Virus record (IMG/VR): IMGVR_UViG_3300033182_000980
Coordinates: 62,001 to 126,000 of that record
DNA length: 64,000 nt
Reading direction: 5' to 3' (one strand)
Shown here one piece after another: positions 2,808-57,037 of the stretch. Position numbers and translations under genes: made by a program. Below the pieces are notes generated by a model. It ran no database searches and was not told the DNA's origin. It saw nothing but the letters and a program-made list of their open reading frames with translations. Numbering within the stretch: position 1 is the stretch's first letter; every line of letters starts with the position of its first letter.

Positions 2808-3670
2808 GAATCGAAACAGACTTTAAGCTCGACTTTAAAGATGTGCTGTTTAAACCTAAAAGGTCTACCCTCACATCACGCAAAGAGGTGAATCTCACAA
2901 GGTCAATCAAGCTACCCCACAGTAAAAGGACTTGGGAAGGTGTGCCTATTGCTGCCGCTAACATGGACACTGTGGCTACCTTTGAGGCTGGTAAAGTCCT
3001 CACAAATCATCACATGATGGTATGCCTTCACAAACATTACACCGAAGAACAGTATGTGGATATATACGACTGGGTGTATTCCAATCAAGGATGTGGCTAC
3101 GCTCAATACTGGGCTTACTCTATGGGTATCTCCGATGAAGAGTTTGATCGTCTTGTGCGTATTCAAGATAAGACCAATGGGATGATCCTCACGATCTGTA
3201 TTGATGTAGCGAACGGATACACAGAGCGTTTCATTAAGTTTGTCGCTAGGGTAAGGGAAAAGTATCCACTCTCAATCATCATCGCAGGTAATGTGGTCAC
3301 GGCAGAAATCACAGAGCAGTTGATCCTTGCTGGTGCAGACATCGTAAAGTGCGGAATTGGCTCTGGGTGTTTCGTTGCTGGCACACCTATCCTCACCAAT
3401 AATGGACTCAAGCCGATTGAGGAAGTTGAGGTAGGGGATAAGGTAATGACTCACATGGGTCGTGAGCGTACTGTGACGAACACCTTTACCCATACCAATA
3501 AGAACCTACTCGTTAATGTGAATGGCATCAAAGCAACACCAAACCATGAGTTCTATGTGGTACACAAGTCAGACGCTGATAAGGTGAATGACGATAACAT
3601 CCATGAGTACGCAAAGTGGGTTCGGGCTGATGAGCTGACTAAAGAACACTTACTACTAGAGGTTCAATAG
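2804..3670 (+). CDS. guaC: GMP reductase N-terminal half fused to split-intein N part
   Basis: N-terminus MRIETDFKLDFKDVLFKPKRSTL matches E. coli-type GuaC; IDVANGY, IAGNVVT, GADIVKCGIGSG, then the intein start CFVAGT; ends at a TAG stop. Confidence 0.92.
   Translation: MRIETDFKLDFKDVLFKPKRSTLTSRKEVNLTRSIKLPHSKRTWEGVPIAAANMDTVATFEAGKVLTNHHMMVCLHKHYTEEQYVDIYDWVYSNQGCGYAQYWAYSMGISDEEFDRLVRIQDKTNGMILTICIDVANGYTERFIKFVARVREKYPLSIIIAGNVVTAEITEQLILAGADIVKCGIGSGCFVAGTPILTNNGLKPIEEVEVGDKVMTHMGRERTVTNTFTHTNKNLLVNVNGIKATPNHEFYVVHKSDADKVNDDNIHEYAKWVRADELTKEHLLLEVQ
3368..3667 (+). mobile_element. Split intein N-fragment (IntN, 100 aa), IMPDH-1-like
   Basis: Block A CFVAGTPILT, GLKPIEEVEVGDKV, block B TPNHEFYV; ends EVQ-stop. 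Confidence 0.9.
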
Positions 3671-3679
3671 TTTATTTAT
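3668..3679 (+). promoter_or_regulatory. Motif A (TAGTTTnTTTAT), putative late promoter
   Basis: TAGTTTATTTAT; its TAG is the guaC-N stop; upstream of the endonuclease. Confidence 0.55.
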
Positions 3680-3722
3680 ATCTCTGATTATGATGAAACT
3701 AGGTATCGGTAGAGGTAGTGTC

Positions 3723-4667
3723 ATGCTCATCACAATCAGAAAAAATAATATGCTTGTCAAAGGCTTCTCCAAAGAGGGGCGATGCAACTATGCAATGCTT
3801 GAGGACGGTTCTAAGATACAGTCCTCAAAGCTAGGTAGTATCTCTATTGAGTGTTCAGAGTGTTCTAAGCAAAGCCACATACAATGGAGAACTGCCCTGT
3901 TAAGTAAGCCTTACTTATGCCAATCCTGTGTTGTTTCTGGAGATCGTAATGGGTTCTTTGGTAAGACACACACAGAGGAGACTAAGAAAGCCCACTCTGA
4001 CTTTATGTGTGGGAGATACACGGGTGAGGATAATGCTTTTTATGGCAAGACTCACACTAAAGAAGCGAGGGAAAAGATACGCTCGGCACAAACATGGCAA
4101 AAAGGATCATCTAATCCGTTCTTTGGTAAGACTCATTCGCCAGATACGATTGAAAAGATCATTGAGGGGAACAAAGCCTATCGGGAGTCTCTAACGGAGG
4201 AACAAAGAGCTAAAACCTCAAAAAAGTTGAGTCGTACTCAAAAGGATTTCCAAAAGAGCAACCCAAAATACTACAGGGAAATAAAGCAAAGGGGAGCATA
4301 CGCTTCGGCTAAGTCTCACAAGAAGTACAAGATGAACAAGCTAGAAGAAAAGGTTTATCAAGTGCTTCAAGATCACTTTACAGATATGTTCAAGTACACA
4401 GTCATCTTAGGTCATTTGCAGTTTGACTTTGGGTGTAAGAGTAAGCGTATCTTGATTGAGGTTCAAGGGGATTATTGGCATGGAAACCCTGCTCTCTATG
4501 GAGAGGGTAAAAGACCCTTGAACAACATACAGATCAACAAACAAGCTAAGGATAAGGTAAAACAATCATGGTGTGAGGACCATGACTTTACCCTACTCAC
4601 ATTTTGGGAAAGCGATATAAACGCAGACCCTAACATCATCTTAAGAGGAGTTTTAGATGTTATCTAA
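3723..4667 (+). CDS. Free-standing homing endonuclease: three NUMOD3 motifs plus C-terminal Vsr/DUF559-like nuclease
   Basis: [42 protein letters not shown]; FDF...[12 protein letters not shown]...WE. Start at 3723 chosen from the GAGGT RBS (ORF open from 3690). Confidence 0.85.
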
Positions 4668-4791
4668 GTACAAGCTAGTAGAAATCAATACCCTAGAGAC
4701 TGAGCCTAACCCATCGGGTATCGCCTATGACCTTGAGGTCGAGGAGGATCACTCATATACGATTGGGGAGAATAGGACTGTAGTTCATAAC
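4657..4791 (+). mobile_element. Split intein C-fragment (IntC, 45 aa)
   Basis: Block [13 protein letters not shown] and block G VVHN followed by a +1 Ser. Confidence 0.9.
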
Positions 4792-5286
4792 TCTGCTTGT
4801 ACGACTCGTATTCAAGCAGGTGTGGGTTATCCACAGTTAAGTGCTGTGATTGAGTGTGCCGATGCCGCTCATGGCTTGGGTGGTCGCATCATGTCGGATG
4901 GAGGCTGTACCTGTCCTGGTGATGTAGCTAAGGCATTTGGAGGAGGTGCTGATTTCGTCATGCTTGGGGGTATGCTTGCAGGACATACCGAGAACCTTAG
5001 ACTGGATGACGAGGGTAACGCACTCTTCTATGGTATGTCCTCTGACACAGCGATGGAGAAGTATCATGGAGGGGTTAATGACTATCGTTCATCCGAGGGA
5101 CGAACCGTAGCCATTGAGCGTAGAGGTCCGATTAAAGATACTCTTCAAGATATACTTGGGGGTATTAGATCAACCTGTACTTATATTGGAGCGAGTGAGC
5201 TTAGAGAGCTGAGTAAATGCACGACTTTTATTCGTGTTCGTCAGCAGTATAATCCAGTGTTTGAGTCTAAGACGATTAAGAGCTAA
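4657..5286 (+). CDS. guaC: Split-intein C part fused to GMP reductase C-terminal half
   Basis: Own RBS (AGAGGAG) and ATG; after VVHN comes SACTTR...[22 protein letters not shown]...[28 protein letters not shown], the canonical GuaC sequence. Confidence 0.92.
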
Positions 5287-5290
5287 GTTA

Positions 5291-5340
5291 TAGTTTATTT
5301 ATGTATTCCTCTGTAAGAACCTTATCTTTACAGAGGAATA
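5291..5340 (+). promoter_or_regulatory. Motif A plus RBS-sequestering hairpin
   Basis: TAGTTTATTTAT 5291-5302; perfect 13-bp inverted repeat 5304-5316/5328-5340 containing the GAGGA RBS. Confidence 0.65.
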
Positions 5341-5344
5341 CATC

Positions 5345-5938
5345 ATGTATCTAAAGAGAGCATTACTTAACCTTGAGCGTAGGGTTGCTGATCTTGAAGC
5401 TGACCTTCAGCCTCAACTTGGTAAACCTGGTGGAGTCAAGCACACAACACAGCGTATTGACGAAGCCTTACCCGACGGGAGCCCGAAAGAAATCGAGCTG
5501 ATAGATACAGTCAATAAGGGTCAAGGGATCTCTAATCAAGACGCAAGGATTGTGTATCGCTTTGACGACTGTAATCCAGCTCTTGACGGAACGACTATGG
5601 TTAAGGGTTTTTGTGTCTCTTCTCATGGTCAGTTTAGAATGGACCAAAGAGGGATTACAGTTCGCAAGATCCAAGAGTTCTTCTTTAATCTGGAGAAGTA
5701 CCTAGAAAGGAATGAGACTAATCGGAGGACTTTCGACTTGCGAGACTCAATCAATAGAGGAATGGAAACCAAGTGGACAGATGAGCGTAGTAACAATCTC
5801 ACAGTAGTCTTTAGACTTGAGGGAGACAGTGCCAAGATCATCACTACTTATTACAAGAATAAGAAAGACCCGATCTTGACCGAGGAGAAAGACTACTCAC
5901 GCTTTATTCGACCTAGAGGTCGTAGACGAAGGCGTTAG
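5345..5938 (+). CDS. Putative BECR/DUF4258-like RNase-fold protein with a divergent coiled-coil leader
   Basis: N-terminal LLNLERRVADLEA resembles the leader; C-terminal SSHGQFRMDQRGIT...VVFRL...KIITTYY resembles the DUF4258 pattern. Confidence 0.45.
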   Translation: MYLKRALLNLERRVADLEADLQPQLGKPGGVKHTTQRIDEALPDGSPKEIELIDTVNKGQGISNQDARIVYRFDDCNPALDGTTMVKGFCVSSHGQFRMDQRGITVRKIQEFFFNLEKYLERNETNRRTFDLRDSINRGMETKWTDERSNNLTVVFRLEGDSAKIITTYYKNKKDPILTEEKDYSRFIRPRGRRRRR

Positions 5939-6342
5939 TAAGCACCTGCTATGTGTTCGATTTCTTCTTCGACCTTCATAGCAAGCATATACCAACGCTC
6001 TGCAAGGTCTTGGTAGTAGGGGTCTTTGCCTCTACTGAAAGAGGGCATCTTTTCAAGCTCACGCTCCATTTCTTGCATAGCCTTTAAGACTTTTTCTGCT
6101 GACCTACGAACAGGCGTAGAAGCTGTTCTCTGCTTGCTCTTGTACTCATTCGTGAGCCGATACTCTTTTACGAGAGCTTCATATTCTTTGTTCTGCGATG
6201 GGGTAAGACGATCTTGGTCTTCAAGGAGTTGAAGCTCATCTAACCTTGCTCTATCTTTTTTAGACATAGTGCGAGCTTGTCTCTCAAGGCGAGCAATACG
6301 ACCCTCAAGTTCACGAATTATTTCTGAAGCTGATCTTCTCAT
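5935..6342 (-). CDS. MRRSASE-leader protein 1 (unknown cargo)
   Basis: MRRSASEIIRELEGRIARLERQA; GGAGAA RBS. Confidence 0.85.
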   Translation of the reverse strand: MRRSASEIIRELEGRIARLERQARTMSKKDRARLDELQLLEDQDRLTPSQNKEYEALVKEYRLTNEYKSKQRTASTPVRRSAEKVLKAMQEMERELEKMPSFSRGKDPYYQDLAERWYMLAMKVEEEIEHIAGAY

Positions 6343-6386
6343 AGTTTGTTCTCCATTTGGTTAATATGACCACCAATGAAAAACCT

Positions 6387-6398
6387 ATAAAAGACCTA
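6387..6398 (-). promoter_or_regulatory. Motif A variant
   Basis: TAGGTCTTTTAT upstream of leader protein 1. Confidence 0.45.
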
Positions 6399-6401
6399 CA
6401 A

Positions 6402-6455
6402 ATAAAAAATGTCTCTTAAACACCCTCTGTGGCTTAGTGAGGGGTCTAAGAGACA
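6402..6455 (-). terminator. Intrinsic terminator downstream of the SSB-like gene
   Basis: Inverted repeat TGTCTCTTA (6410-6418)/TAAGAGACA (6447-6455) with inner CCCTC/GAGGG, followed by a T-run on the minus strand. Confidence 0.6.
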
Positions 6456-6528
6456 TAGAGCCTTTAGTTGAATCAAAGGCTATTGAGCGTATTCAACCAT
6501 GACTTAAGTCATGGGTCAAGGCTTTTTC

Positions 6529-7245
6529 TTAGAGCATACCGTCAAGGATCTCATCTGCATCAAAGCTAGAGTTGAAACCACCACCGCTGTTGCCTGTAGG
6601 CGAACCAACCGAACCACTCATCTTCTCACGAATCTGATCGAGAGTAAGGTCTTGAGCGATGTCATTTTGGATGTTTGCGTGGATAGGCTTAGCCGCTTCC
6701 ATACAAGTATTGAACATATCAGAACCCTTGTCGCTCAAGGTCTTGAACAGAGACTCTTTACAAGGAGCGAAAGTCATCTTGTGGAACTGTGGATCAGTCA
6801 CGGTGATTGAGATGTCATGCTGACTCAAAGGGAACTCGGAGTTGATAGACTCAAGCTGACGATACTTATCGAGTGAGAACACCCAAGTCTTGACCTCAAA
6901 CTCACCATTGGCGAAGCGAGCCTTATCAAGCGTACCATTAGCGTCTGTCGGCCAGAAGATGAGAGTAGTAGCGATTGAGGTCTTTGAGGGATTACCCGCG
7001 ATCTTCTGATACTCTGGACCATGATCGAGGAAGTATCCGACATCCTTGTGATAGAGGCGGCGACCACCCTTGAACGAGGGGTTGGTCGGATTACCATTTG
7101 CGTCCTCGAACTGAACAGCGTTGTCCTCAAGACCTGGAAGAGCCACGAAAGTCACACGAAACTTTCCCTTTTGTGGCTTCCAACGAACCTTACCACCTGA
7201 GAGGATTGGTGAAGTAGAACCGAGTGTGAAGTCTGAAAAACCCAT
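6529..7245 (-). CDS. Putative phage single-stranded DNA-binding protein
   Basis: Beta-rich core with aromatic residues, Gly/Ser linker and acidic C-terminal tail FDADEILDGML typical of phage SSBs. Confidence 0.5.
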   Translation of the reverse strand: MGFSDFTLGSTSPILSGGKVRWKPQKGKFRVTFVALPGLEDNAVQFEDANGNPTNPSFKGGRRLYHKDVGYFLDHGPEYQKIAGNPSKTSIATTLIFWPTDANGTLDKARFANGEFEVKTWVFSLDKYRQLESINSEFPLSQHDISITVTDPQFHKMTFAPCKESLFKTLSDKGSDMFNTCMEAAKPIHANIQNDIAQDLTLDQIREKMSGSVGSPTGNSGGGFNSSFDADEILDGML

Positions 7246-7425
7246 AGGGCATTCTCCTGTATATATTGCCTGTCGGCAGTTAAAGTTAAGAGCGTTAGCG
7301 AGTCATCCGAAGTGAGTGGCTCTGTTGCTCACATACTCTTATACGATATACACAAGATGTTGCCGAACTTTTCCCAAAAAACTTTCAGAGAAATAGTAAG
7401 TGCCCGAAAGAGTTGAAGAAAAACC

Positions 7426-10287: not shown

Positions 10288-12183
10288 TCAAGGCCTACTA
10301 GAGATGAGTACACATTTACCAGAAGAGGGGTACTTACTCGTAAGCCTAACCCAAAGTTTTTTAGCAGTCGGATTGGTACTGCCGTTTGGTACGCAATAGT
10401 GGGGGGCAAAAACGAAAGGCTTTTTCAACTCATCCCAAATGTGTCGTATAAACCCTAAATAAAGATGATCTCCTAGCCTCTGACCTAAGAAATCTTCGTA
10501 TATCTCGGACTCGGACACAAAAGCCAAATAGATACTTGAGGTTGATCTGTCTCCCGCCTTTTCTTGAAGAACCCCTATGTCATAGTCACAAGGGCTGTCA
10601 AAGTTATAACTCCTACCCCACTCATACACAGCACCTTGAATACAACCTAGTTCCTCACCACCCCAACTTGTCCCATCGTCCTCCTGCATTTGAAGATTGA
10701 GGAAGAAAAGCACATCTAACCTCTCATGTCTGGTGTGATACTTTAAATCTACTTCCTCAAACTTGTGAGGTATAGAAGATAGTTTCAAGTATCTATGAGC
10801 CACCCTCTTTGCAGACTTCTCATAGCAGTTCTTATAGGGGCGACATGAAGCCTTTTCAGAGAAGCCCATGTCATCACAGCTTTTAGACTCACAATGCTCT
10901 TTATCCCACTTGCGTGGCATCTTGAACTCGGAGCTTTGTTTCTTCCACTTGCCCCCTAATCGCTTGTACTGAGCCAAAGCCCAACCGTTAGCATAAGCCG
11001 ATGGGAAGGTCTGAAACCCCTTGCCTTCATTGACAGGATTGACGGACTCTTTACCCCTAGAAACAGGTTTACTAGACTCACCTTTAGCTAGAGCTTGTAT
11101 CTCGGACCATAGCTTCTCATCGGTAGGTATGCTCTTTCCCCCTGCTTTCCTTAGAGGTGAAGAGTTATTGGCGAAGCCACTATCATAAGGGATAACCCTA
11201 GCACTACCGCTACCACTATCATGCACATAACCTCCGTCAAAGCCCTCGGCGGGTTTACGACCATAGGACTCGGAACGATCAAGATTTCTCGATTTGAGGT
11301 TAGGTGAGTCGGGGCTTGGGCGACCTATATTCCTCGCCCCATCACCATTTGGCATTTGAGAGCCTTCACCTTTGTCCTTAAGGTCTGTGCTTTTACCTGT
11401 GGGTGTTCCATTACTAAGGGTGCTTAACTCATCGGGTGGGCTAACCTGCCTAAAGAAATCGGCAACACGCATTTTTGCTGTTTCGGGAAACTCATTTTTG
11501 ATCTTCCTCACAGCTTTAATGTACTTTTTAGGTGCGTACTTCGCTAAGTCTTTAAGCCATGCCATAGGCTCTTTTAAATGCTTAGACCTGTATGAAGGAC
11601 GACTCGACTCACCTACAACATAAGAAACGATGTTTGCCACTTCATTTGGCTTTCTTCTCGATACGAAGTTGATTGCATTGATGGTGTCCTCTAAGCGAGG
11701 GTAAAACTCATTGTCATCTAAGCGATGGTGGAGTAGCTCACCTGTTTCTTGTCTATATTGTGGAGTCCTCTCCCTAAGACCAGGAAGCCCTGCTGTTGGA
11801 GAGTCCGCTCTCGGATCACCGTCTCGTGATCTGGTATAAAGGATTTGATATACATGAACCAACTCGTGTGCGACTACTCTATGAAGGGCTTCTGCTAGTT
11901 CTCTACCCTCATAGTTTTCTTCAAAGTAGAGAAGGTTCACATAAAGAACAGAGTTAGTTGGATCGTATTTAGCTTCAACTCTACTATACTTTTCGGACGC
12001 ACTAGGGGGTATGATCTCTACCCTCAAGTCTAAGTCCTCTACATGACCGCGAGTCCTCGGTGGTGGGGGTACAGTGACATTTTTACTAAGTTTGTCATAG
12101 ACACCGACTTGGCTTAATAAGTATTCTTCGACTTGTTCCACCACAGCTCTAGGTGGTCTTATTCTACTCGTTCTACTCTGCAT
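10288..12183 (-). CDS. Multidomain protein: HExxH zincin-like domain, PSAYANG/KRLGG module, Cys module, GNAT-like C-terminus
   Basis: VAHELVHVYQ; FPSAYANGWALAQYKRLGG; MPRKWDKEHC...GFSEKASCRPYKNCY; FLGQRLGDHLY...TNPTAKKLW. Preceded by a TAGTTTCTTTAT motif and GGAG RBS. Confidence 0.65.
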   Translation of the reverse strand: MQSRTSRIRPPRAVVEQVEEYLLSQVGVYDKLSKNVTVPPPPRTRGHVEDLDLRVEIIPPSASEKYSRVEAKYDPTNSVLYVNLLYFEENYEGRELAEALHRVVAHELVHVYQILYTRSRDGDPRADSPTAGLPGLRERTPQYRQETGELLHHRLDDNEFYPRLEDTINAINFVSRRKPNEVANIVSYVVGESSRPSYRSKHLKEPMAWLKDLAKYAPKKYIKAVRKIKNEFPETAKMRVADFFRQVSPPDELSTLSNGTPTGKSTDLKDKGEGSQMPNGDGARNIGRPSPDSPNLKSRNLDRSESYGRKPAEGFDGGYVHDSGSGSARVIPYDSGFANNSSPLRKAGGKSIPTDEKLWSEIQALAKGESSKPVSRGKESVNPVNEGKGFQTFPSAYANGWALAQYKRLGGKWKKQSSEFKMPRKWDKEHCESKSCDDMGFSEKASCRPYKNCYEKSAKRVAHRYLKLSSIPHKFEEVDLKYHTRHERLDVLFFLNLQMQEDDGTSWGGEELGCIQGAVYEWGRSYNFDSPCDYDIGVLQEKAGDRSTSSIYLAFVSESEIYEDFLGQRLGDHLYLGFIRHIWDELKKPFVFAPHYCVPNGSTNPTAKKLWVRLTSKYPSSGKCVLISSRP

Positions 12184-12212: not shown

Positions 12213-12224
12213 ATAAAGAAACTA
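12213..12224 (-). promoter_or_regulatory. Motif A
   Basis: TAGTTTCTTTAT upstream of the 12183-7426 operon. Confidence 0.6.
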
Positions 12225-12799: not shown

Positions 12800-13308
12800 G
12801 CAAACGAGCTGAACGGATAAAAGAGAAGATCCCCATCCTCTCGGTATTAAGTGCCTATAACTATGATGTACATGGTCGGGATCATCAGCAACAGTTTAGA
12901 TGCGACCTACATGGTGATGGTTCGGATAACGCACCCTCGGCTCGTGTGTATCCAGAGACAAACACATGGTTCTGTTTCGCCTGTGGTAAAGTGCGAGACT
13001 CCATCGCTACGGTCATGGAGAAAGAGGGGTTAGACTTTGGTAAGGCTTGTACTGCCCTTGAACTCAAATATGGACTTGAGGTCTGGAAGTACGAGCCTAA
13101 GAAGGACATCTTTGAGGACACCTATGAAGACCCTACACGCAAGGAAATACTAGTGCGTAGGGTAGAGGGTCTATTAAACGAGAAAACCTCTAGGAGAGAG
13201 GATTATGAGGACACCTTACGCTATTGGGAGGTGTTCAATATGCTCTCCTCACTAGAGGACTCTAAGGTGCGTCAATGGGAGAAGCTATATAAGGCTTTAT
13301 CCTCTTAG
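12796..13308 (+). CDS. Stand-alone CHC2 zinc-finger protein (DnaG primase zinc-binding domain)
   Basis: FRCDLHGD...PSARVY...WFCFACG; ATGA overlap with the upstream gene; no TOPRIM domain. Confidence 0.85.
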   Translation: MSKRAERIKEKIPILSVLSAYNYDVHGRDHQQQFRCDLHGDGSDNAPSARVYPETNTWFCFACGKVRDSIATVMEKEGLDFGKACTALELKYGLEVWKYEPKKDIFEDTYEDPTRKEILVRRVEGLLNEKTSRREDYEDTLRYWEVFNMLSSLEDSKVRQWEKLYKALSS

Positions 13309-14981
13309 AAGCGACCACCGTCATCTTCTGGTGGGTTATACTTTAAGCCAAGATTTTTAGCGATGATCTCAATCGCTTCTGTGTTCTCGGCTAACATACG
13401 ACCTGCTTCGCCATAGACACCTCTAAGAACCTCATTAAACTGAGAGTCATTGAGCGTCCACATATCACGCTCAAGTTTAGCCTTAGTGGTCATAGGGTCT
13501 ACATTGAGGAGTTCTAAGATCACATCAATATCCAATGACCCCTTCTGATAAAGATTGAAGAGGGCATCGAATGTATCTTGGTTGTCTCTTAGCCCAAGTC
13601 GAGTGAAGCTAAGGGTAGGGTGTATTACAACCTCATCACCATCTTCATCTTCCTCAATGAAGCCCATGCGTCTACACATCGGTTTCAAGATGTTCTCCTC
13701 GACCATCTCTTGAAGAACCTCACGCATGAGCATATAGCGTGTGTTGATGACTTCTAGGTTGATCCTATCACCACTATAGCTTGACTCGCCCGAAAGCAGA
13801 GACTCGGTAACACCTAGACCAGCATACATTTGTCGGTCGGTCATGTCGTATTCACCCGATAGCTCAAGTAGACGAGAGTCTGCACCCATCTCCTCCCAAG
13901 AAACTTGGAAGTTAGCGATGATCGAGTAATCGGGGTCTTGGAGTGCAAGGTCAACTTGATCTCTTAACTCCTCAACATCAGCCGCGTCCATATCTTCTGC
14001 ATAAACGAGTCGGATAGGTGTCATGTGTCTTGAGGCGATTGAGGTTTGAGCCTGTCTTAACTTATCACGATACACCAAGATTCTGAGGCAACGCTCAAGC
14101 ATGGAGTGTCCACGAGGCTCATATTGAGATTTCTTACGAGCCATGTAGTAGACGAACGACCCTTGATCTGGATCGGTGTTGAGGTCAATGTTGCGTCCAT
14201 CTCGGATGGCTTCAACGACATCACCTGGCATTGAGTCTACTATCCTAAGAGCTGAAGGATCATTAACCGAAGCTCGTTCGACTACATCACGAGTCTTGCT
14301 GTCGGGGATGAGCTGGATGATCTTTTCGTTGGTGAAAGGAAAGCTCTCCATGTGGACTTGTTCGGGAGGGAGGATGCGAACACCAGTCCACCCTTTATAG
14401 TTCTTCTTGAGCCACTTGTAAGCTCGTTCATGGGAGTCCTCATATTCAGTCCACTCTGTGAAGGCAGACCCATCTTCTTTGAGAACATTCCGACCACTAT
14501 GAGTCACCTCTTGAGGCACATCTGGATTATTATCTTCACAGAAAACGAACACCTCACCGAGTAGGTTAAACTCATGTAGGATTTCTATAAGGCGGTGAAG
14601 TAGTCCGACACGCTTCGCCCACTTTTCACAGAACCTAAGTGCCTCATAAGCCATATCCCGATTACGAGCTTTGGGTAGACCTAATCTGATCTTAGAGAGG
14701 GGTAGCTCTGTATGTAGGTCTATCGCTTGACCTACGAAGGGGTCTGTTCGATAGAAGAACCTAAAATAGTTGCGTTGTTCGTCTTGGCTTTGGGGTAGCT
14801 CAAGGAAGTCAGTCGATAGCTCTGGTGAGTAGAAGTTCCCACCCGATCCCATCATAGAGCCACCTGTGGTCATAGCGACCTTGACTCTTGATTTCATCTC
14901 GGCAGGATTGAGCTTACGAGTGATCGCTTTTGATCGGGGTTTAATCTTCCCAACTGGTTTGGCTTCTAGTTCTTCGCTCAT
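13305..14981 (-). CDS. Phage portal protein
   Basis: 558 aa; RFFYRTDPFVGQAIDLHTELPLS, YEPRGHSMLERCLRIL and SYSG..INLEV resemble large-phage portal sequences. Confidence 0.7.
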   Translation of the reverse strand: MSEELEAKPVGKIKPRSKAITRKLNPAEMKSRVKVAMTTGGSMMGSGGNFYSPELSTDFLELPQSQDEQRNYFRFFYRTDPFVGQAIDLHTELPLSKIRLGLPKARNRDMAYEALRFCEKWAKRVGLLHRLIEILHEFNLLGEVFVFCEDNNPDVPQEVTHSGRNVLKEDGSAFTEWTEYEDSHERAYKWLKKNYKGWTGVRILPPEQVHMESFPFTNEKIIQLIPDSKTRDVVERASVNDPSALRIVDSMPGDVVEAIRDGRNIDLNTDPDQGSFVYYMARKKSQYEPRGHSMLERCLRILVYRDKLRQAQTSIASRHMTPIRLVYAEDMDAADVEELRDQVDLALQDPDYSIIANFQVSWEEMGADSRLLELSGEYDMTDRQMYAGLGVTESLLSGESSYSGDRINLEVINTRYMLMREVLQEMVEENILKPMCRRMGFIEEDEDGDEVVIHPTLSFTRLGLRDNQDTFDALFNLYQKGSLDIDVILELLNVDPMTTKAKLERDMWTLNDSQFNEVLRGVYGEAGRMLAENTEAIEIIAKNLGLKYNPPEDDGGRF

Positions 14982-15207: not shown

Positions 15208-15248
15208 ATTTTATACCCCCTCTGTTGTTAGGTGGGGATATAAAACAA

Positions 15249-15536
15249 CTATTGAGGTATATGATAACTATATGCTTCTGCCATTCGGATCATGCCGTCT
15301 ATGGTTGGATCATGGCTATTGGTATAAAACCTCAACCCCCCAAACTTTTCTTTGATCTGAACGACATAGAAGATGCCCGCATCTGGTGTCTGTATGAGGT
15401 GGCTCTGGATTTGATTGCATAAGGTATCGACCAATGGATACCAAGACTCGGACACTTCAAGATATGTCAGAGTCGGATCACCATATTCATCTGTGAACAA
15501 TGACTTCCACTTAGCGATCAACTCATCATGTGTCAT
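15249..15536 (-). CDS. Conserved phage hypothetical protein (QIKEKFGGLRFY family)
   Basis: GW-like SWYPLVDTL and QIKEKFGGLRFY motif common in phage proteins; ATG at 15536 overlaps the upstream stop. Confidence 0.7.
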   Translation of the reverse strand: MTHDELIAKWKSLFTDEYGDPTLTYLEVSESWYPLVDTLCNQIQSHLIQTPDAGIFYVVQIKEKFGGLRFYTNSHDPTIDGMIRMAEAYSYHIPQ

Positions 15537-16041: not shown

Positions 16042-16054
16042 GCCTTTACCTTTG

Positions 16055-16066
16055 TAGTTTATTTAT
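16055..16066 (+). promoter_or_regulatory. Motif A
   Basis: TAGTTTATTTAT upstream of 16106. Confidence 0.6.
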
Positions 16067-16105
16067 ACCTACTTCTTTGCAGTAGAATAAGCCGAAGGAG
16101 AGATA

Positions 16106-19554: not shown

Positions 19555-19566
19555 TAGTTTCTTTAT
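19555..19566 (+). promoter_or_regulatory. Motif A
   Basis: TAGTTTCTTTAT upstream of 19606. Confidence 0.6.
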
Positions 19567-20368: not shown

Positions 20369-20508
20369 TAGTATTTTTATGGGTATCAAAGAATACCCCC
20401 CAACCCTCCGCTCAAAGGCTCTTAGTATGTCTCCCCATTCCTGTTCTAAATGTGGTGGTATCGTTCGTATTTTCTGCCCTATGCAGAAGAACTCTGCCCC
20501 TTGTGTAC

Positions 20509-22067: not shown

Positions 22068-22074
22068 TTTTCTC

Positions 22075-29842: not shown

Positions 29843-29854
29843 TAGATTGTTTAT
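29843..29854 (+). promoter_or_regulatory. Motif A variant
   Basis: TAGATTGTTTAT upstream of the 2H gene. Confidence 0.45.
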
Positions 29855-31166: not shown

Positions 31167-31239
31167 TTTGTAGTTTTTATATTCTCTCATTGTAGGGTGG
31201 TATCAATAACATTCAACCCTATAACGAGAGGTTAAGAAC

Positions 31240-32286: not shown

Positions 32287-33375
32287 ATGGCTAAAGGCTA
32301 TTATGTTTATCGTCAGTTCAACAAGAGGACAGGCGAGTATTACATCGGCAAGGGTACTTACTCTGATCGAGATCCCGATGGGAGTAAGTACAAAGGCTCT
32401 GGTATCTTGCTCTTGCGTAAAATGAACGCTCACCCAAATGACTTTGAGAAAGAAATCTTAAAGGATTTCGAGAGCGAAGAGGACGCTTACGCTTATGAGG
32501 CAGAGCTTGTGGGTGAGAGGTATATCGGTGGTGCAGACCATGACCCACTTTGTTTGAACATGAACAGTGGAGGCATGGGTTCGTCCTCTAATGCTTTGAA
32601 GCATTATTACTCTAACCCTATCGTGAAGATGGAGATGAGTGAGAGGATGAAAACCTTATGGGAAGATGAGGATTATCGGGAGAAAGTTCTAGCTTCAAGG
32701 GAGGGTGAAGCTAGAGAGAGGTGGCACGAGTCTCATCAAAAGGCTCTTAAAGACCCAGAGGTGAGAGCGAGAATAAAGGAGGGGGCAAACAATCCTCACA
32801 AAAAGAAATCAGTGCGAGAGGCACAGATTAAAATGAAACCGATCAATGTCGAGAAAGACGGAGTGGAGATTGAGATCCCTAGAGGAGAGTTAGCCGATTA
32901 CTTTAGGTTGGGTTGGTCGCTTTGCTCTAAGGGTGTTGTGAACATTCACCATATGGACATTGGGATATATAGCTGTGGTCAGCATGATGTGGTGAAGCAT
33001 CTTGTGTTGGAGCATGGATTCAAGTTTGGAACTCACTATGACTTAGAGCGGGTTAACTATGATGTGATCTCTAAGTTAGCGGGTGTTCGGGAGGCCAAGT
33101 CTAAGGGTCAGATGGGGAATTGGTCTTTGAAGCCTGTGAAGCTGATTAACTTAGAGGGTGAGGTAGAGCTTGTGCCCCGTGATGTTTACTTGGACAAGTT
33201 AGAGGAGGGCTATACCTTTAAGAGTGCGAATGTGATAATAAGAAACCACACGCTCAAGCAGACTTGCGTCTTAGGCAAGGGTAGAGCGAGGAGGGTCTTG
33301 CTAGAAAGGGGAGGTTGGGAGCTTGGTAGCAAGCGAGGTTATGAGGCAGTGAGTACCAAGTCTCTTGATTTGTAG
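32287..33375 (+). CDS. Free-standing GIY-YIG (Seg-like) homing endonuclease
   Basis: YYVY...TGEYYIGKG, YKGSG, AYAYEAEL, CLN; located downstream of nrdB. Confidence 0.8.
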   Translation: MAKGYYVYRQFNKRTGEYYIGKGTYSDRDPDGSKYKGSGILLLRKMNAHPNDFEKEILKDFESEEDAYAYEAELVGERYIGGADHDPLCLNMNSGGMGSSSNALKHYYSNPIVKMEMSERMKTLWEDEDYREKVLASREGEARERWHESHQKALKDPEVRARIKEGANNPHKKKSVREAQIKMKPINVEKDGVEIEIPRGELADYFRLGWSLCSKGVVNIHHMDIGIYSCGQHDVVKHLVLEHGFKFGTHYDLERVNYDVISKLAGVREAKSKGQMGNWSLKPVKLINLEGEVELVPRDVYLDKLEEGYTFKSANVIIRNHTLKQTCVLGKGRARRVLLERGGWELGSKRGYEAVSTKSLDL

Positions 33376-33384
33376 TTTATTTAT
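33373..33384 (+). promoter_or_regulatory. Motif A
   Basis: TAGTTTATTTAT upstream of leader protein 2; TAG is the GIY-YIG stop. Confidence 0.65.
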
Positions 33385-33860: not shown

Positions 33861-33872
33861 TAGTTTATTTAT
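33861..33872 (+). promoter_or_regulatory. Motif A
   Basis: TAGTTTATTTAT upstream of leader protein 3. Confidence 0.65.
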
Positions 33873-35136: not shown

Positions 35137-35148
35137 TAGATCCTTTAT
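35137..35148 (+). promoter_or_regulatory. Motif A variant
   Basis: TAGATCCTTTAT upstream of the HAD gene. Confidence 0.4.
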
Positions 35149-42503: not shown

Positions 42504-42515
42504 TAGTTTGTTTAT
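42504..42515 (+). promoter_or_regulatory. Motif A
   Basis: TAGTTTGTTTAT upstream of 42558. Confidence 0.6.
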
Positions 42516-42557
42516 TGATACCAAGCTATAAACAAGAACCTTGAAAGGAAATGCTTT

Positions 42558-43772: not shown

Positions 43773-43784
43773 TAGTTTGTTTAT
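43773..43784 (+). promoter_or_regulatory. Motif A
   Basis: TAGTTTGTTTAT upstream of leader protein 4. Confidence 0.65.
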
Positions 43785-45293: not shown

Positions 45294-45305
45294 TAGTTTA
45301 TTTAT
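45294..45305 (+). promoter_or_regulatory. Motif A
   Basis: TAGTTTATTTAT upstream of leader protein 5. Confidence 0.65.
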
Positions 45306-48857: not shown

Positions 48858-49850
48858 TTATAGGATTTGTAGTTTCTTTATATTCCTCCCCCCTTTAAAG
48901 CCTTTGGTGTTAGAAGCTATCTTGGCAATCAAATCGAGATCATAGCACCTAATCGCTTCCATCATTAGACGGCATTCAAACCACATATCCCCATCAACAA
49001 GGGGCATGAACAGGTCATGGATGTTGTCAACACCTAACATGACATCGACTCCTCCCTCTATGAGTTCCATAACAGGGGCGATAGAGTTATGGATTGGTGC
49101 GTAGTATTCTGACTGTTGCTTCATACTCAAAGCCGCACTAGGACAGACCACTACCCCGATCCCTACTTCTTGTAGTTTAGAAATCACACGCTTACGATCT
49201 TCTTTTTGCTGACACGCAAGAGAGATCGCATGGACGAGTCTAACTTGACCCTCAAGGCCATGTTCAAAGGTCTTATCAGCGACCATCTCAGACTCACGCT
49301 CTGAAGGGATGTTGTTTTGCCCTACATGAACATCAACAGGCTTGTTCATGTCTTTGGCTAGGTTAAAGATAAAGTCCATGTGTGCGAGAGGATCTTCATC
49401 TCTGTCGGGGAGTCCACCGATCACATCTGCCATCTCACAGGCTTGTACGAACATTTTTTGAGCTTCGGGTTCAAGAACACCCTCAAGAGGTTGTACCGCA
49501 AGTTGGAGGTCAAACCCTTTCTTTGCGTATTCTCTTTTAAGGTTGACAGCGACTTGCATAGGTAGAAGCCCAACGATTTGATCTGCATCAATAAATGTAC
49601 GACACTTAGATACACCTTGATAGATCATGTGTTCAATGCACCGAGCCATTCGAGAGTGGAGTGTGTACTCGGTGTATTCTTCTTTGAGCTTTCGATAAAG
49701 TTTCCACTTTTCTTGTAGGCTCGACTGAGAGAGTTTTAGACCTTCTTCGCTGATTAAATATGCTTTGTCAAAGTGTGCGTGGTGGCAAGCAAACCCACCT
49801 AGAGCATCTACTTTGTCCAAAAAAAAACTCTCTATGTGCCAATAGTTCAT
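48858..49850 (-). CDS. Amidohydrolase, cytosine-deaminase (CodA)-like
   Basis: HxH motif (CHHAHFDKA), VDVHVG, LVHAISL, LGVDN. Confidence 0.75.
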   Translation of the reverse strand: MNYWHIESFFLDKVDALGGFACHHAHFDKAYLISEEGLKLSQSSLQEKWKLYRKLKEEYTEYTLHSRMARCIEHMIYQGVSKCRTFIDADQIVGLLPMQVAVNLKREYAKKGFDLQLAVQPLEGVLEPEAQKMFVQACEMADVIGGLPDRDEDPLAHMDFIFNLAKDMNKPVDVHVGQNNIPSERESEMVADKTFEHGLEGQVRLVHAISLACQQKEDRKRVISKLQEVGIGVVVCPSAALSMKQQSEYYAPIHNSIAPVMELIEGGVDVMLGVDNIHDLFMPLVDGDMWFECRLMMEAIRCYDLDLIAKIASNTKGFKGGRNIKKLQIL

Positions 49851-55900: not shown

Positions 55901-57025
55901 GGTAAGTTATTCTCGGCTACCGAGATTTCTGTTGGTACAGAGGCGGCTAATGTCCTCACCAAGAACCTCACCATTGGAACTGACGGTTCAGTAGAGACAT
56001 CAGGTGAGATTACAACTAGCTCGGTAGTCAACTTCACCACAGCTTCTCAAGGTGCGATTGTCTTTAACTCTGACCTTGGTAATGTAGCACCAAATGTGGA
56101 CGATGACTTTGGTCTTACAGTTAATCGTGGCAATACCACAGACGCTAAACTTTATTGGGATGAGGGTGATGACGCTTGGAAGATCGAGACAGGTAATGTT
56201 CAAGTACAGAACACCCTTGTTGTTGACTCTGACGCGGCGAATAAAGTTGAGATTGCGGCAGGTTCTATCACGACTGCAAACGATAGTGGTATCAGCTTTG
56301 GAGCGGATAGCCTAACCACAACAGGTTCAATCACATCTGCAACACCAGCGTTAAACACCAACAGTACAATAGTGGCTACTACAGCTTTCGTTAAGGGTCA
56401 AAAGCTAGGTGACTTTGACCAAGTGAACACAGCAGGGTTCAACGCTAACGATCAAATCCTTGTGTGGGATCAAGACAATAGTGAGTTTAAGGCTGGTGCC
56501 TCTGTTTACGCCAAAGAGAATGCTATTGATGATGTTGCTGAAGCACTTATTAATGGTAGTTTAATCAAAGATGGTGATGATGGTGGTAATACAGGTGCAG
56601 ACACCATTCAGTTTACGCTTGATGACCAGAACGACATTATCAACCTCGCTCTTGGAATCTCATCTGGAAACCTAACAGATGTCTCCACAGATGCTCCAGC
56701 TAATCTCCAAGTTTTGAGGTACACGACTGAACAAGGTGCGAATCAGAACAAGTATGTACCTACAACACTTGGAACAGCGGCTGATGTTGACACAGGGCTT
56801 GATAATGGAGAAATCCCAACCCTCACAACTCACTATCTCGCAAATCAAAGCGAGACAGCAGACCTTATCCTCACAGGTAGGGTCATTGAGACTATTGACT
56901 ATGGTTCTGTTACCGAAGCGTTTGACGGTGCTACCGACTATGCCTTCGACATGAATGGTGGTGTTGAAGATTTCTCGGACACCGTTATTTATGGTTCGGA
57001 GGATTATGGGATGCTTGTAGTTTAA
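49919..57025 (+). CDS. Giant tail fibre / adhesin-like virion protein (~2368 aa)
   Basis: Start MSTFGTG at 49919 after AAAGGAG; L.DV repeats, DATTKGYVD, VATTEFV, IADNAITTVKI, DFRVEGDNQ motifs; G/A/T/D/N-rich. Confidence 0.75.
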   Translation: MSTFGTGSTTTAGASITLRNFTGTDGNQAGTDGLVPGPALAQEGYVLGAGGDWTLEIKAVADPNDATERIATTRFVANYVANAQLGGNALLSALGDVGIANIADDQFLQYNVGNARWENATLTIGAISDVNLAGLQAGNTIVWDAVNSEWIPGQGGGGGAATLDELGDVTIAGVANKHFLVHNGAGQFVNRLITTTDLDDGTNIALLDAANDFTNTLTVTNSDIILSTPGADKEIIISDGVQDLVAIGNDGPYIRLRTGDPQKAQYGDQAFTLDVWDFTNNLRMWDANGQVSFSFSRGTGDLSLSGDLTAVDASLAGIEATSLTSTANSFPITFADAQASALVLKDANANEYMVFDTDNDQIINKVEAEFGVAPAAVVRVGGGYVRFSGGGGEIAFPDLDPVALTLKDSANNNIITIDTAQNQVNHHVKSVFTNGAGNTLTVQHNALTFGGGDGEISASSKLNVVIKDNELVADGAAFSIADDGATEYLKIFTDNADQKIVLGADLHTTNLLANSLESSANSFLFKLTGGQATSLRFTDLAGNTDYLSIDTDNDLIENHVQAKFLASPIISNSSLLFRDGDSDLSATTHKLSITLKDNELVADGAAFTIKDGGATEYLTIFTDNGDQKVVANVDLYEGANRVLNVSNSIDALSDVDTTTNAPVPGQALVWDGANFVPGTGGKTQEEIEDIVGGMVAGNTETGIAVTYVDNGALAGKLDFVVDDGVVGFLAGAQNFGGDKTFSGALTATGDTDLTGANFVRVPAPVGATDATTKGYVDTAIAGRQPLEATLTGLATIAPVVNDIIIATGNDTFDVINTTAGMQTFLGTNLTIQAGAVGDVLRVTAVDGQNIPTAFENTKLASTDLSDTADLILRDGSVAFTGAVDLGAQNITNVADIALDTISADNNTITINLTDNQASALNITEAGNSYLNFVTTDAGEKVVFGKLFEAPTLSKIGDIEISNGQIQTTNVNNNLSFNDNNLLTTGTLGAGATTVTSLSVSEGNITNVSDIALDTISADGDTIVVSMTDNRVGAFEIKEGNTSYLNVITTNGGEKIEVGQANAGIALDLTNASVTATTQPNNLVEGNSTLVATTEFVRTVVQAVGNISDLDDLADVNLGVKNAGQQDEDGVALANAQILVYDDDAGVNDNSWKNVSLSGDIEITNAGVATIADNAITTVKINDGEVTNAKLENSYVAITDGANTDNLPLGQTLTFNAVANETTVVVSADQGAGADGVEITIGLPDDVTIAQDLTVTRNLIVNGTTTTIDTTNLDIEDAVIRLNRRADGNIDGANGHDIGIFMERGTNDHAIFYFDEGEDIFKLGTTTSAHTATDFDATTTFGTLKLATLTATSNSTIGGTLGITGDVSVNAGQATITAQTGNITTKGDFVVLNPANGNASITISADNDDVLITSFGGDIYFDNENLWTTGSLSAGSTSLTSLVVNDAGAAVDFRVEGDNQTHLLYTDGTRDRVGINTNAPDTQFHVVGATKLVGALTHTTGAVFFNSGQEDFDFRVDGDNQANLLFVDASADSIGIGKNNPSKTLDITGTVAISSTLDVSGKTTLAGSLDLTTGSATGITFRSEIGNNGADADQILLRVNQGGAGPVYKSIKWVAADDRFSIESSLKSEGNFTVGADQFTVDASNGNTSVVGTLGVGGATTINNAGGTADLLVQNNGADVLNVDVSAGTTTVTGQLKTDDLRAKTADGGGNDFKIRIEDNVANALEISDATNGLSFMVFDTRDNAELINFNQDIVVKGEVNIEQANANGIFFNSDLGANPSIDATLITIDGGNTKGDVVLGWDTSDNAINLNANAQVHLQGLAGSNALTIGGALVANATIVMTTAGAITLDGTLDSPTINTDKITDRTADGLVIELADALNGSALLVKDAGGANYLTINTDAQTLTFNEDVNFDASATFDTTVEVTGITTLNDSLKVNKAGSDTGIIFNADRGAGENINAQDFDALLLHVENGGSNATDAYIKWDDSESSFKIEGGKLFSATEISVGTEAANVLTKNLTIGTDGSVETSGEITTSSVVNFTTASQGAIVFNSDLGNVAPNVDDDFGLTVNRGNTTDAKLYWDEGDDAWKIETGNVQVQNTLVVDSDAANKVEIAAGSITTANDSGISFGADSLTTTGSITSATPALNTNSTIVATTAFVKGQKLGDFDQVNTAGFNANDQILVWDQDNSEFKAGASVYAKENAIDDVAEALINGSLIKDGDDGGNTGADTIQFTLDDQNDIINLALGISSGNLTDVSTDAPANLQVLRYTTEQGANQNKYVPTTLGTAADVDTGLDNGEIPTLTTHYLANQSETADLILTGRVIETIDYGSVTEAFDGATDYAFDMNGGVEDFSDTVIYGSEDYGMLVV

Positions 57026-57037
57026 TAGTCTATTTAT
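57026..57037 (+). promoter_or_regulatory. Motif A
   Basis: TAGTCTATTTAT upstream of tail fibre 2. Confidence 0.6.

What the first reader, a model, noticed from the sequence alone, without database searches (positions are those of the whole stretch)
3668..57037. Conserved 12-bp motif TAGTTTnTTTAT marks a putative late regulon
Seen: about a dozen exact or near-exact copies plus variants (3668, 5291, 12224-, 16055, 19555, 20369, 33373, 33861, 42504, 43773, 45294, 48870, 57026; variants 6398-, 29843, 35137). All but 48870 lie at or just past an upstream stop and are oriented with the next gene; they precede leader genes, polyproteins and a tail fibre. None precedes holA/holB, nrdA, recD2, SNF2 or purA. 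The motif is not sigma70-like and differs from the T4 late TATAAATA. Inference: promoter for a phage-encoded sigma factor or RNA polymerase. It can be used to predict virion proteins among hypotheticals.
Basis: partly seen in the sequence, partly recalled or inferred. Interest (0 to 1): 0.65.

Follow-up and report, generated by a model that had tools for sequence, protein, structure and literature searches.

The report
Late-gene promoter motif of a huge phage
A 16-base sequence (TTWR-TAGTTTNTTTAT-R) recurs about 80 times in this uncultured 376-kb phage, almost always 27-63 bases in front of a gene, and is most likely the promoter of its virion and lysis genes. This is an ordinary kind of phage signal, but no matching polymerase or sigma factor could be found.

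Summary
The window holds 11 exact copies of TAGTTTNTTTAT (0.06 expected) and 19 sites by a weight matrix. The whole 375,691-bp phage genome holds 41 exact copies and about 80 matrix sites (1-2 expected).

Sites are strand-matched to the next gene and lie 27-63 nt before its ATG. None lies in the 14 convergent gaps. Twenty-seven head a run of genes after a strand switch, where a promoter must exist and nothing else is conserved.

All nine recognisable structural or lysis genes sit in motif-headed units, against 3 of 19 replication or nucleotide genes. The "late promoter" reading is therefore supported, but only by inference: no transcript data could be obtained.

- The motif is 16-17 nt long.
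- About a third of sites follow a divergent gene start, not a stop.
- Variants also head nrdB and a helicase/RecD-like unit.
- The motif is one of three classes. The other two are GTAACCCCTTATCTATA before small genes and TCATATAA before replication genes.

Leaders often form a stem anchored at the motif's TAT that pairs with the ribosome-binding site. No phage RNA polymerase, sigma region 2 or T4 gp55 homologue was detected. The only candidate factor is a conserved tandem sigma-region-4-like protein.

The parts
2179..2190 (-). P1 variant TAGTTGATTTAT (1 mismatch, 15.3 bits), 48 nt before the ATG of a 115-aa ORF (1783-2130, -)
3668..3679 (+). P1 exact, overlapping the stop of the N-terminal GMP-reductase half. 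It heads the HNH homing endonuclease (3723-4667) and the C-terminal GMP-reductase half (4657-5286)
5291..5302 (+). P1 exact, 42 nt before a 197-aa ORF (5345-5938). The leader forms a -23 kcal/mol stem that pairs with the ribosome-binding site
6387..6398 (-). P1 variant TAGGTCTTTTAT (2 mismatches, 13.4 bits) before an MRRSASE-leader family gene (5935-6342, -)
12213..12224 (-). P1 exact, heading the unit 10288-12183 (631 aa) and downstream minus-strand genes. It sits back to back with a class-2 motif at 12231 (+)
15240..15251 (-). P1 variant TAGTTGTTTTAT before an 88-aa ORF (14941-15207) and the portal gene (13305-14981). The leader stem is anchored at TAT and kept by compensatory changes in 7 lineages
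16055..16066 (+). P1 exact, in the 64-bp divergent gap (16042-16105), before a 573-aa WGR-domain protein (16106-17827). It is perfectly conserved in relatives while the flanks diverge
19555..19566 (+). P1 exact, before a 177-aa ORF (19612-20145)
20369..20380 (+). P1 variant TAGTATTTTTAT in a convergent gap, with no convincing downstream ORF. It is an orphan and would read antisense into 20509-21348 (-)
29843..29854 (+). P1 variant TAGATTGTTTAT before a 184-aa ORF (29902-30456). It is adjacent to the class-2 motif at 29832 (-) that heads the SNF2 helicase
31171..31182 (+). P1 variant TAGTTTTTATAT before nrdB (31240-32214), with a strong leader stem (z = -4.4)
33373..33384 (+). P1 exact before an MRRSASE-leader gene (33435-33779)
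33861..33872 (+). P1 exact before an MRRSASE-leader gene (33923-34249)
35137..35148 (+). P1 variant TAGATCCTTTAT (17.5 bits) heading 35191-35784, the 1102-aa helicase (35792-39100) and the RecD-like helicase (39198-41294)
42504..42515 (+). P1 exact in the divergent gap next to purA (41291-42484, -), before a 404-aa ORF (42558-43772)
43773..43784 (+). P1 exact before an MRRSASE-leader gene (43836-44306)
45294..45305 (+). P1 exact in a divergent gap before an MRRSASE-leader gene (45342-46220)
48870..48881 (+). P1 exact (25.4 bits) lying antisense inside the last codons of the amidohydrolase gene (48858-49850, -), 1037 nt before the 2368-aa gene. It is an orphan or antisense site
57026..57037 (+). 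P1 variant TAGTCTATTTAT before the 2084-aa protein with an Mtd_N tail-fibre N-terminus (57084-63338)

Best explanation
TTWR-TAGTTTNTTTAT-R ('P1') is the core promoter of one of three transcription classes of an uncultured 376-kb tailed phage: the class that carries head, tail, packaging, lysis and presumed internal-virion genes, so most probably the late class. It is a single-block promoter with no -35 partner. Transcription probably starts inside or just after the terminal TTTAT (motif positions 9-12). The 25-55-nt leader often folds so that its very 5' end (TAT plus a pyrimidine-rich stretch) pairs with the ribosome-binding site. The sequence facts are shown: location, orientation, spacing, conservation, gene content and leader helices. 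The rest is inferred: that it is a promoter, that it is late, where the start site lies, and what reads it. The only candidate seen is g51, a conserved 188-aa tandem sigma-region-4-like protein. An unrecognised phage polymerase is the alternative.
For: Statistics: 41 exact copies against 0.3 expected, and 78-88 matrix sites against 1-2.3 expected. Geometry: 38 of 41 exact and 22 of 35 one-mismatch copies lie 27-63 nt upstream of a same-strand ATG. By gap type there are 21 divergent, 38 tandem and 0 of 14 convergent. P1 is the only recognisable signal at 27 of 114 directon-first genes, in gaps as short as 64 bp. The shortest motif-to-ATG distance (27 nt) leaves no room for a separate -10 element and start site downstream, so the motif must itself be the proximal promoter element. 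There is no information upstream of position -4. Sigma70-like sites are depleted (18 against 30.7) and terminator-like sites are at chance, with none at P1 sites. Footprinting: the motif is unchanged while the flanks diverge in relatives L002, L005 and L031. Exact copies stay above control in relatives down to about 80% portal identity: 23, 12, 5, 4, 4 and 4 copies, with controls 0-1. Gene content: the terminase unit, prohead protease, portal unit (variant), tail sheath, baseplate wedge and hub, tail lysozyme, amidase and Mtd_N fibre all lie in P1 units. DNA polymerase, DnaB, clamp loader, SbcC, methyltransferases, nrdA, holA/holB, SNF2 and purA do not (Fisher p = 3e-5). Two other motif classes cover the other genes. 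Leaders: 39 of 53 have the ribosome-binding site paired and 40% have z < -1.5. Helix starts peak at motif position 9. The portal-unit leader helix is kept by compensatory changes in 7 lineages.
Against: No RNA polymerase, sigma region 2 or gp55 homologue was found. g51 lacks a sigma-2 domain, its recognition helices are invariant across relatives whose motifs differ, and its structural matches are weak (E 0.1-1). Leader helices that include TAT imply the RNA contains part of the motif. That fits a start inside the motif but also fits cleavage of a longer RNA. The class is not purely structural: it includes nrdB, a helicase unit, a homing endonuclease and a GMP-reductase half. Two high-scoring sites (20369, 48870) have no gene to serve. 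A relative with 87% portal identity (G004) uses the full motif only about 7 times and otherwise keeps only TTTATR.
Confidence: 0.68

Rival explanations
1. RNA processing and stabilising site. Long polycistronic RNAs are cut by host RNase E or a phage endoribonuclease within the single-stranded UAGUUUNUUUAU. This would leave a downstream mRNA whose 5' end is sealed in the stem with the ribosome-binding region.
For: The motif is A/U-rich. By my recollection of the published RNase E preference (R-N, cut, W-U-U), which I did not check here, AG/UUU within the motif would fit it. The motif is followed by a stem whose 5' arm starts at TAT of the motif in many sites and in 7 orthologous lineages, so the RNA contains part of the motif. 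In 26 of 47 tandem sites it sits exactly at the upstream stop, as an intercistronic signal would.
Against: Twenty-seven sites lie after a divergent gene start, in gaps as short as 64 bp with only 14 nt upstream of the motif and no other conserved element, so an upstream promoter would have to lie inside the opposing gene each time. About 24 bits of information is far more than known RNase E sites carry. There are no sites in convergent gaps or at ends of units. The other two classes share the 3' core TATA and behave the same way.
Confidence: 0.15
2. Operator for a phage activator or repressor (for example g51), placed next to weak, degenerate core promoters, rather than the core promoter itself.
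For: g51 has two sigma-4/HTH-like domains, which are a DNA-binding fold. Relatives keep only TTTATR plus variable upstream bases. In G000 about 24 further genes carry TTTATR alone at 30-60 nt, against 5 for the reversed control. This suggests that a minimal core plus an add-on element is possible.
Against: The element is asymmetric, single-copy and contiguous with the TTTAT core, at a fixed distance from the ATG. There is no room for a separate -10/-35 pair in the shortest leaders. This reading overlaps with the best explanation, since an upstream half read by a factor is still part of the promoter.
Confidence: 0.1
3. Transcription terminator or translational stop signal (tandem stops TRA-TAG plus a T-run).
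For: TAA or TGA followed by TAG gives in-frame double stops at many tandem sites, and the motif is T-rich.
Against: No hairpin precedes the T-run. The terminator scan found none at the sites. There are 27 divergent sites without an upstream stop and none in convergent gaps, where terminators are expected.
Confidence: 0.03

Closest known systems
T4 late promoters (TATAAATA, read by host RNA polymerase with gp55, gp33 and the gp45 clamp)
   Same: Both are single A/T-rich blocks with no -35 element, placed directly before structural and lysis genes and also before a homing-endonuclease gene. The phage encodes clamp-loader subunits. The candidate factor g51 lies two genes downstream of a clamp-loader gene on the same strand.
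   Different: The sequence is different and twice as long (16-17 nt against 8). No gp55-family match was found (phrog_234 and phrog_12791 both negative). gp33 was not searched.
Single-subunit (T7/T3/SP6-type) phage RNA polymerase promoters
   Same: Both are contiguous, high-information blocks of about 17 nt ending in TATA/TAT followed by a purine. Several classes share the 3' half and differ in the 5' half. The class-2 motif ends in CTATAG, as the T7 and SP6 promoters do (from memory, not tested here).
   Different: There is no T7-type polymerase match in six frames (PF00940; the control genomes cannot validate this search). No A/B/C motif pattern occurs in any protein of 500 aa or more.
phiKZ/AR9 jumbo-phage promoters read by virion and non-virion multisubunit polymerases
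   Same: Both are jumbo phages with phage-specific conserved motifs per temporal class. The phiKZ late element T-3 A T G+1 overlaps the start site (PMC7598289), and P1 ends in TAT followed by a purine.
   Different: No beta or beta' homologue was found (PF00623 and PF00562 negative at E <= 1), and there is no DFDGD-type motif in a plausible protein. In phiKZ the late motif is only 4 nt.
Bacterial sigma70-family -10 element (TAnnnT), alone or extended
   Same: TAGTTT fits TAnnnT. A 6-nt discriminator (NTTTAT) and then a purine would give canonical geometry.
   Different: The discriminator is invariant, which is not usual. Leader helices suggest that the RNA already contains TAT. There is no -35 element and no TGn at the usual place. 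Sigma70-type matches are depleted in the region.

Membership tests
Promoter (generic: site of transcription initiation) | Oriented with the downstream gene, at a constrained short distance from it | tested here: met
   60 of 76 exact or one-mismatch copies lie 27-63 nt upstream of a same-strand ATG
Promoter (generic: site of transcription initiation) | Present where a promoter is obligatory (after strand switches) and absent where it is not (convergent gaps) | tested here: met
   27 of 114 directon-first genes carry it, and 0 of 14 convergent gaps do. Orphan exceptions are 20369 and 48870
Promoter (generic: site of transcription initiation) | Primary transcript 5' ends at a fixed offset | not testable with these tools
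Late temporal class | Heads virion, packaging and lysis genes rather than replication genes | tested here: met
   9 of 9 structural or lysis genes against 3 of 19 replication or nucleotide genes, Fisher p = 3e-5
Late temporal class | Transcripts accumulate late in infection | not testable with these tools
   The phage is uncultured and no RNA data were available
T4-type late promoter system | gp55-family sigma encoded by the phage | tested here: not met
   phrog_234 and phrog_12791 gave no match at E <= 10 in six frames
T4-type late promoter system | TATAAATA-like 8-nt element at -10 | tested here: not met
   The consensus is TTWRTAGTTTNTTTATR
T7-type single-subunit polymerase promoter | Cognate single-subunit RNA polymerase gene | tested here: inconclusive
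   PF00940 gave no candidate, but the search has no positive control among the control genomes. Regex for motifs A and C was negative. Many giant proteins have no detectable homologue
phiKZ-type multisubunit polymerase promoter | Phage beta/beta'-like genes | tested here: not met
   PF00623 and PF00562 gave nothing at E <= 1
Sigma70-type promoter | -35 and -10 hexamers with a 16-18 nt spacer | tested here: not met
   There is no information upstream of -4, and none of 18 consensus matches coincides with a site
Intrinsic terminator | GC-rich hairpin followed by a T-run | tested here: not met
   The hairpin follows the T-rich block rather than preceding it, and no terminator-like hit lies at a site

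The most novel reading that the evidence does not exclude
This lineage of huge phages runs a three-class transcription programme. The three single-block promoters share the core T-Y-T-ATA and differ in their 5' halves. The programme would be read by machinery with no recognisable homologue. That machinery could be host polymerase retargeted by an unconventional factor such as the tandem sigma-4 protein g51, which has no sigma-2 domain. It could instead be an undetected polymerase among the many giant orphan proteins. In this reading late mRNAs start inside the promoter, so that their first bases seal the ribosome-binding site in a 5'-terminal stem, coupling mRNA stability to translational control.
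Probability: 0.2. Interest if true: 0.7.

Novelty: new member of a known kind. Interest (0 to 1): 0.42.

Why it matters
If the motif is the late promoter, it gives a simple, testable handle on gene expression in a clade of uncultured 270-620-kb phages in which most genes have no known function. In this genome about 170 genes (53% of the predicted protein residues) fall in P1-headed units. They include about 22 proteins sharing the N-terminal leader MRRSASEIIRNLE.RIARLE and most of the giant orphan proteins, which become candidate virion components. The lack of any recognisable polymerase or sigma factor for three very specific promoter classes points to a transcription factor or enzyme still to be identified. 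As a finding in itself (a phage-specific promoter consensus) it is of a familiar kind.

Tried and rejected
- **Near-identical DNA:** megablast against the phage collection found nothing.
- **Polymerase and sigma searches in the own genome, all negative:** PF00623, PF00562, PF04542, PF00940, phrog_234 and phrog_12791. Regex for T7 motifs A and C and for DxDGD-type motifs gave nothing plausible.
- **Giant proteins:** PHROGs gave no family for 13 of the 20 proteins of 615-3049 aa scanned, nor for the 2368-aa window protein. phmmer against PDB sequences found nothing for the 2176-, 3049- and 2368-aa proteins. The language-model look-alike search suggested that the 2176-aa protein g49 is helicase-like (score 0.90, a weak lead), not a polymerase.
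- **g51 as a canonical sigma:** rejected. Only region-4-like HTH domains are present, there is no region 2, and Foldseek E-values are 0.1-1.
- **Terminator reading:** rejected.
- **Literature:** no paper in the library prints either motif in a phage context. The papers on phage G and on the 'moraphages' give no comparable promoter.
- **Rfam:** no family in the window.
- **Relative G004:** its very frequent word TTGGATAA (252 copies) lies mostly inside genes and is not a promoter equivalent.
Full report
**What the sequence is.** The window is bases 62,001-126,000 of a single 375,691-bp virus record (IMG/VR; CheckV completeness 100%; 44.9% G+C). No near-identical phage is in the GenBank phage collection.

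The portal protein (window 13305-14981, minus strand) places the phage among uncultured huge phages:
- 72% identity to LR745208.1, a 485-kb metagenomic phage.
- 37% to Tunturiibacter phage Tunturi_5.
- 27% to Bacillus phage G.
- Fifty-one related IMG/VR loci, from contigs of up to 619 kb.

My own gene calls give 431 genes with frequent strand switches.

**Check of the observation.**
- TAGTTTNTTTAT occurs 11 times exactly in the window, against 0.06 expected.
- With one mismatch it occurs 17 times, against 1.3 expected.
- In the whole genome there are 41 exact and 35 one-mismatch copies, against 0.3 and 9.4 expected.
- Aligning the 41 exact copies shows conserved flanks. T is at -4 and -3, A or T at -2, and A or G at -1.
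- The base after the motif is a purine in 30 of 41 copies, and the N is T only once.
- There is no information further upstream. A pyrimidine-rich, G-poor stretch follows at +14 to +20.
- A weight matrix built from these sites finds 78-88 sites genome-wide at thresholds where a Markov null gives 1-2.3.
- Nineteen of those sites are in the window.

**Where the sites lie.**
- Thirty-eight of 41 exact copies and 22 of 35 one-mismatch copies lie 27-63 nt (median about 43) upstream of a same-strand start codon with a Shine-Dalgarno sequence.
- By type of intergenic gap, sites fall in 21 divergent and 38 tandem gaps, and in none of 14 convergent gaps.
- Of 81 matrix sites, 47 have a co-oriented upstream gene. 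In 26 of these the upstream stop codon is part of the motif: TAA or TGA at -3 to -1, or the TAG itself.
- There are 114 genes that open a run after a strand switch, where a promoter must exist.
- Among those 114, 27 have P1, 21 have a second motif, 25 a third, 10 only TTTATR, and 31 nothing recognisable.
- In the window, the 64-bp gap between 16041 and 16106 contains nothing conserved but the motif.
- A consensus scan of 29.5-49.4 kb shows sigma70-type matches depleted (18 against 30.7) and terminator-like hairpins at chance (17 against 14.9). None of either coincides with a P1 site.

**Two further motif classes.** Word enrichment in the gaps that lack P1 revealed GTAACCCCTTATCTATA(g), with the variant GTAACCCCTTAATCATATAAC.
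- There are about 65 copies, 38-82 nt before mostly small genes.
- They are densest at 334-362 kb of the genome.
- In the window they lie at 12231(+), 12513(+), 29832(-) before the SNF2 helicase, and 30537(+).

A third, shorter motif, (A/T)A-TCATATAA, precedes 43 genes. These include the DNA polymerase, a helicase, an SbcC-like nuclease and the RecD-like helicase.

By my own comparison the three classes share their 3' part (TT-N-T-Y-T-ATA) and differ in the 5' part.

Simple unit assignment puts 171 genes in P1-headed units (median 215 aa; 53% of the predicted protein residues) and 121 in class-2 units (median 132 aa). The remaining 139 genes fall in neither.

**Gene content.** Family scans place these genes in P1 units:
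- the terminase large subunit
- a prohead protease
- the portal unit (through the variant at 15251)
- the tail sheath
- a baseplate wedge protein and a baseplate hub
- a tail lysozyme
- an amidase
- the 2084-aa protein with an Mtd_N tail-fibre N-terminus

These genes lie outside P1 units:
- DNA polymerase and a DnaB-like helicase
- another helicase
- a clamp loader and an SbcC-like protein
- four methyltransferase-like proteins
- PhoH and a GroEL-like protein
- nrdA, holA/holB and purA
- the SNF2 helicase, which is class 2

The split is 9 of 9 against 3 of 19 (Fisher p = 3e-5).

The three exceptions are nrdB (one-mismatch site at 31171) and the two helicases behind the two-mismatch site at 35137. 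The site at 3668 heads an HNH homing endonuclease together with the C-terminal half of a split GMP reductase.

About 22 P1-headed genes encode otherwise unrelated proteins that share the N-terminal leader MRRSASEIIRNLE.RIARLERQA. By analogy with capsid-targeting or protease-cleaved propeptides of T4 and phiKZ (my knowledge, not tested), these may be packaged proteins.

**Leaders.** The sequence between the motif and the ATG is more structured than shuffles in about 40% of sites (z < -1.5). In 39 of 53 leaders at least three of four Shine-Dalgarno bases are paired.

When the motif is included in the fold, the leftmost base of the helix that reaches the Shine-Dalgarno region peaks sharply at motif position 9, the T of the final TAT. 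This holds for 8 of 41 strong leaders, and 23 of 41 start between positions 8 and 16.

For the small gene ahead of the portal, seven diverged lineages keep a helix that starts at TAT, through compensatory changes: TATATCCCC/GGGGGTATA, TATACTCTC/GGGAGTATA, TTTATACTCCC/GGGAGTATAAA, TATCATC..CTCC/GGAG..ATGATA and ATCTCCTC/GAGGAGAT.

This argues that the RNA contains at least the last bases of the motif. The start site, or a cleavage site, would then lie at about positions 8-10 rather than 6-8 nt downstream. By contrast, reading TAGTTT as a TAnnnT -10 element with a 6-nt discriminator predicts a start at the purine at position 12. The sequence alone cannot decide between these.

**Conservation.** At orthologous positions in close relatives the motif is intact while the flanks diverge (upstream of the genes at 16106, 12183 and 19612). 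Exact copies per record fall with distance:

| Record | Portal identity | Exact copies |
|---|---|---|
| G005 (227 kb) | 99% | 23 |
| G008 | about 88% | 12 |
| G006 | about 88% | 5 |
| G007 | about 88% | 4 |
| G004 | 87% | 4 |
| G003 | 80% | 4 |
| G001, G002, LR745208.1 | 67-72% | 0 |

Reversed-pattern controls gave 0-1.

In the 290-kb relative G004 only about 7 sites resemble the full motif. There, TTTAT(A/G) preceded by TAA or TAG 3-5 nt upstream sits 22-70 nt before 66 genes. Its small-gene motif is also different: TTATCCCAAG, about 14 nt, then TTATTAG. So TTTATR is the family-wide core and TAGTTT is a lineage-specific extension.

**What reads it.** Six-frame searches of the genome found none of the following:
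- multisubunit polymerase domains (PF00623, PF00562)
- a T7-type polymerase (PF00940; this search has no positive control)
- sigma region 2 (PF04542)
- a T4 gp55-family member (phrog_234, phrog_12791)

The only transcription-like protein is g51 (genome 42275-42841, minus strand; 188 aa):
- Sigma70_r4 scores 26 bits against a cut-off of 24.1, and TIGR02937 scores 32.9 bits.
- The model has pLDDT 83 and shows two helix-turn-helix units. Foldseek's best local matches are ECF sigma region 4, with TM up to 0.79 over about 60 residues but E of only 0.1-1.
- It is conserved at 48-95% identity in relatives, with both recognition helices invariant. That does not fit a factor tracking the variable 5' half of the motif.
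- It lies two genes downstream of a clamp-loader gene on the same strand, and an exact P1 copy lies inside it, upstream of a 2176-aa helicase-like protein.

Many giant proteins have no detectable relatives, so an unrecognised polymerase cannot be excluded.

**Verdict.** The promoter reading is the best explanation (about 0.68). It rests on position, orientation, obligatory-promoter sites, footprinting and class structure. 'Late' is a reasonable inference from gene content, but the class also includes some nucleotide-metabolism and helicase genes.

The main rival is an RNA cleavage and stabilisation site. The leader helices keep it alive, but the 27 divergent sites weaken it.

No literature match to the motif was found. 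Published jumbo-phage promoters (phiKZ, AR9; PMC7598289) differ in sequence and depend on polymerases that this phage does not detectably encode.

Noticed in passing
window 12231(+), 12513(+), 29832(-), 30537(+); genome-wide about 65 copies, densest at G000 334-362 kb: A second, very conserved upstream motif, GTAACCCCTTATCTATA(g), with the variant GTAACCCCTTAATCATATAAC. It lies 38-82 nt before mostly small ORFs and before the SNF2 helicase. It is probably the early promoter class, and it ends in CTATAG as T7 and SP6 promoters do.
   Followed up: partly
e.g. window about 39170 (before the RecD-like helicase); G000 upstream of the DNA polymerase (265288), a helicase and an SbcC-like gene: A third motif, (A/T)A-TCATATAA, lies 18-69 nt before 43 genes, many of them replication genes (94 copies against 33 for the reversed word). 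It is a candidate middle class. All three classes share a T-Y-T-ATA core.
   Followed up: partly
window 5935-6342(-), 33435-33779, 33923-34249, 43836-44306, 45342-46220; about 22 genes genome-wide: A family of otherwise unrelated proteins sharing the N-terminal 24-aa leader MRRSASEIIRNLE.RIARLERQA, nearly all behind the P1 motif and often with a conserved 5' UTR (..GGTGATCTTTAACCCTTAACC..ATGGAGAA). It may be a capsid-targeting or protease-cleaved propeptide.
   Followed up: partly
window 2804-5286: The GMP reductase gene is split. The N-terminal half plus a Hint fragment lies at 2804-3670, a free-standing HNH homing endonuclease at 3723-4667, and the C-terminal half (PDB GMP reductase residues about 201-363, E 1e-69) at 4657-5286. 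This is a 'fractured gene' or split-intein-like arrangement, with a P1 site at the junction.
   Followed up: partly
window 22068-22827: A 760-bp gap without a called gene lies ahead of holB/holA/nrdA. It is A/T- and purine-patterned, with short tandem repeats (periods 15 and 16) and inverted repeats. It could be an origin or regulatory region, or an unrecognised gene.
   Followed up: partly
window 20369-20380(+) and 48870-48881(+): Two high-scoring P1 sites have no downstream gene. Each points into the 3' end of a convergent gene (20509-21348 and the amidohydrolase 48858-49850). They may be antisense promoters or relics.
   Followed up: partly
G000 42275-42841(-) (locus L053:1195-1761): g51 is a conserved 188-aa protein made of two sigma-region-4-like helix-turn-helix units with no region 2. 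It lies two genes downstream of a clamp-loader gene on the same strand. An exact P1 copy lies inside its coding sequence, upstream of an 83-aa ORF and a 2176-aa helicase-like protein.
   Followed up: yes
G000 about 184-197 kb: A cluster of tRNA-like sequences sits in long gaps between small ORFs. It was seen in the upstream-sequence listing and not scanned with ARAGORN.
   Followed up: no
relative G004 (loci L074-L088): The word TTGGATAA occurs 252 times in 290 kb, mostly inside genes on both strands, which is far above expectation. It is unexplained. A modification, restriction-avoidance or recombination signal are possibilities.
   Followed up: no
G000 3255-7340(-): The terminase large-subunit gene is 1361 aa and carries endonuclease-like insert matches (phrog_4645, phrog_9666). 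It is probably intein- or endonuclease-invaded.
   Followed up: no
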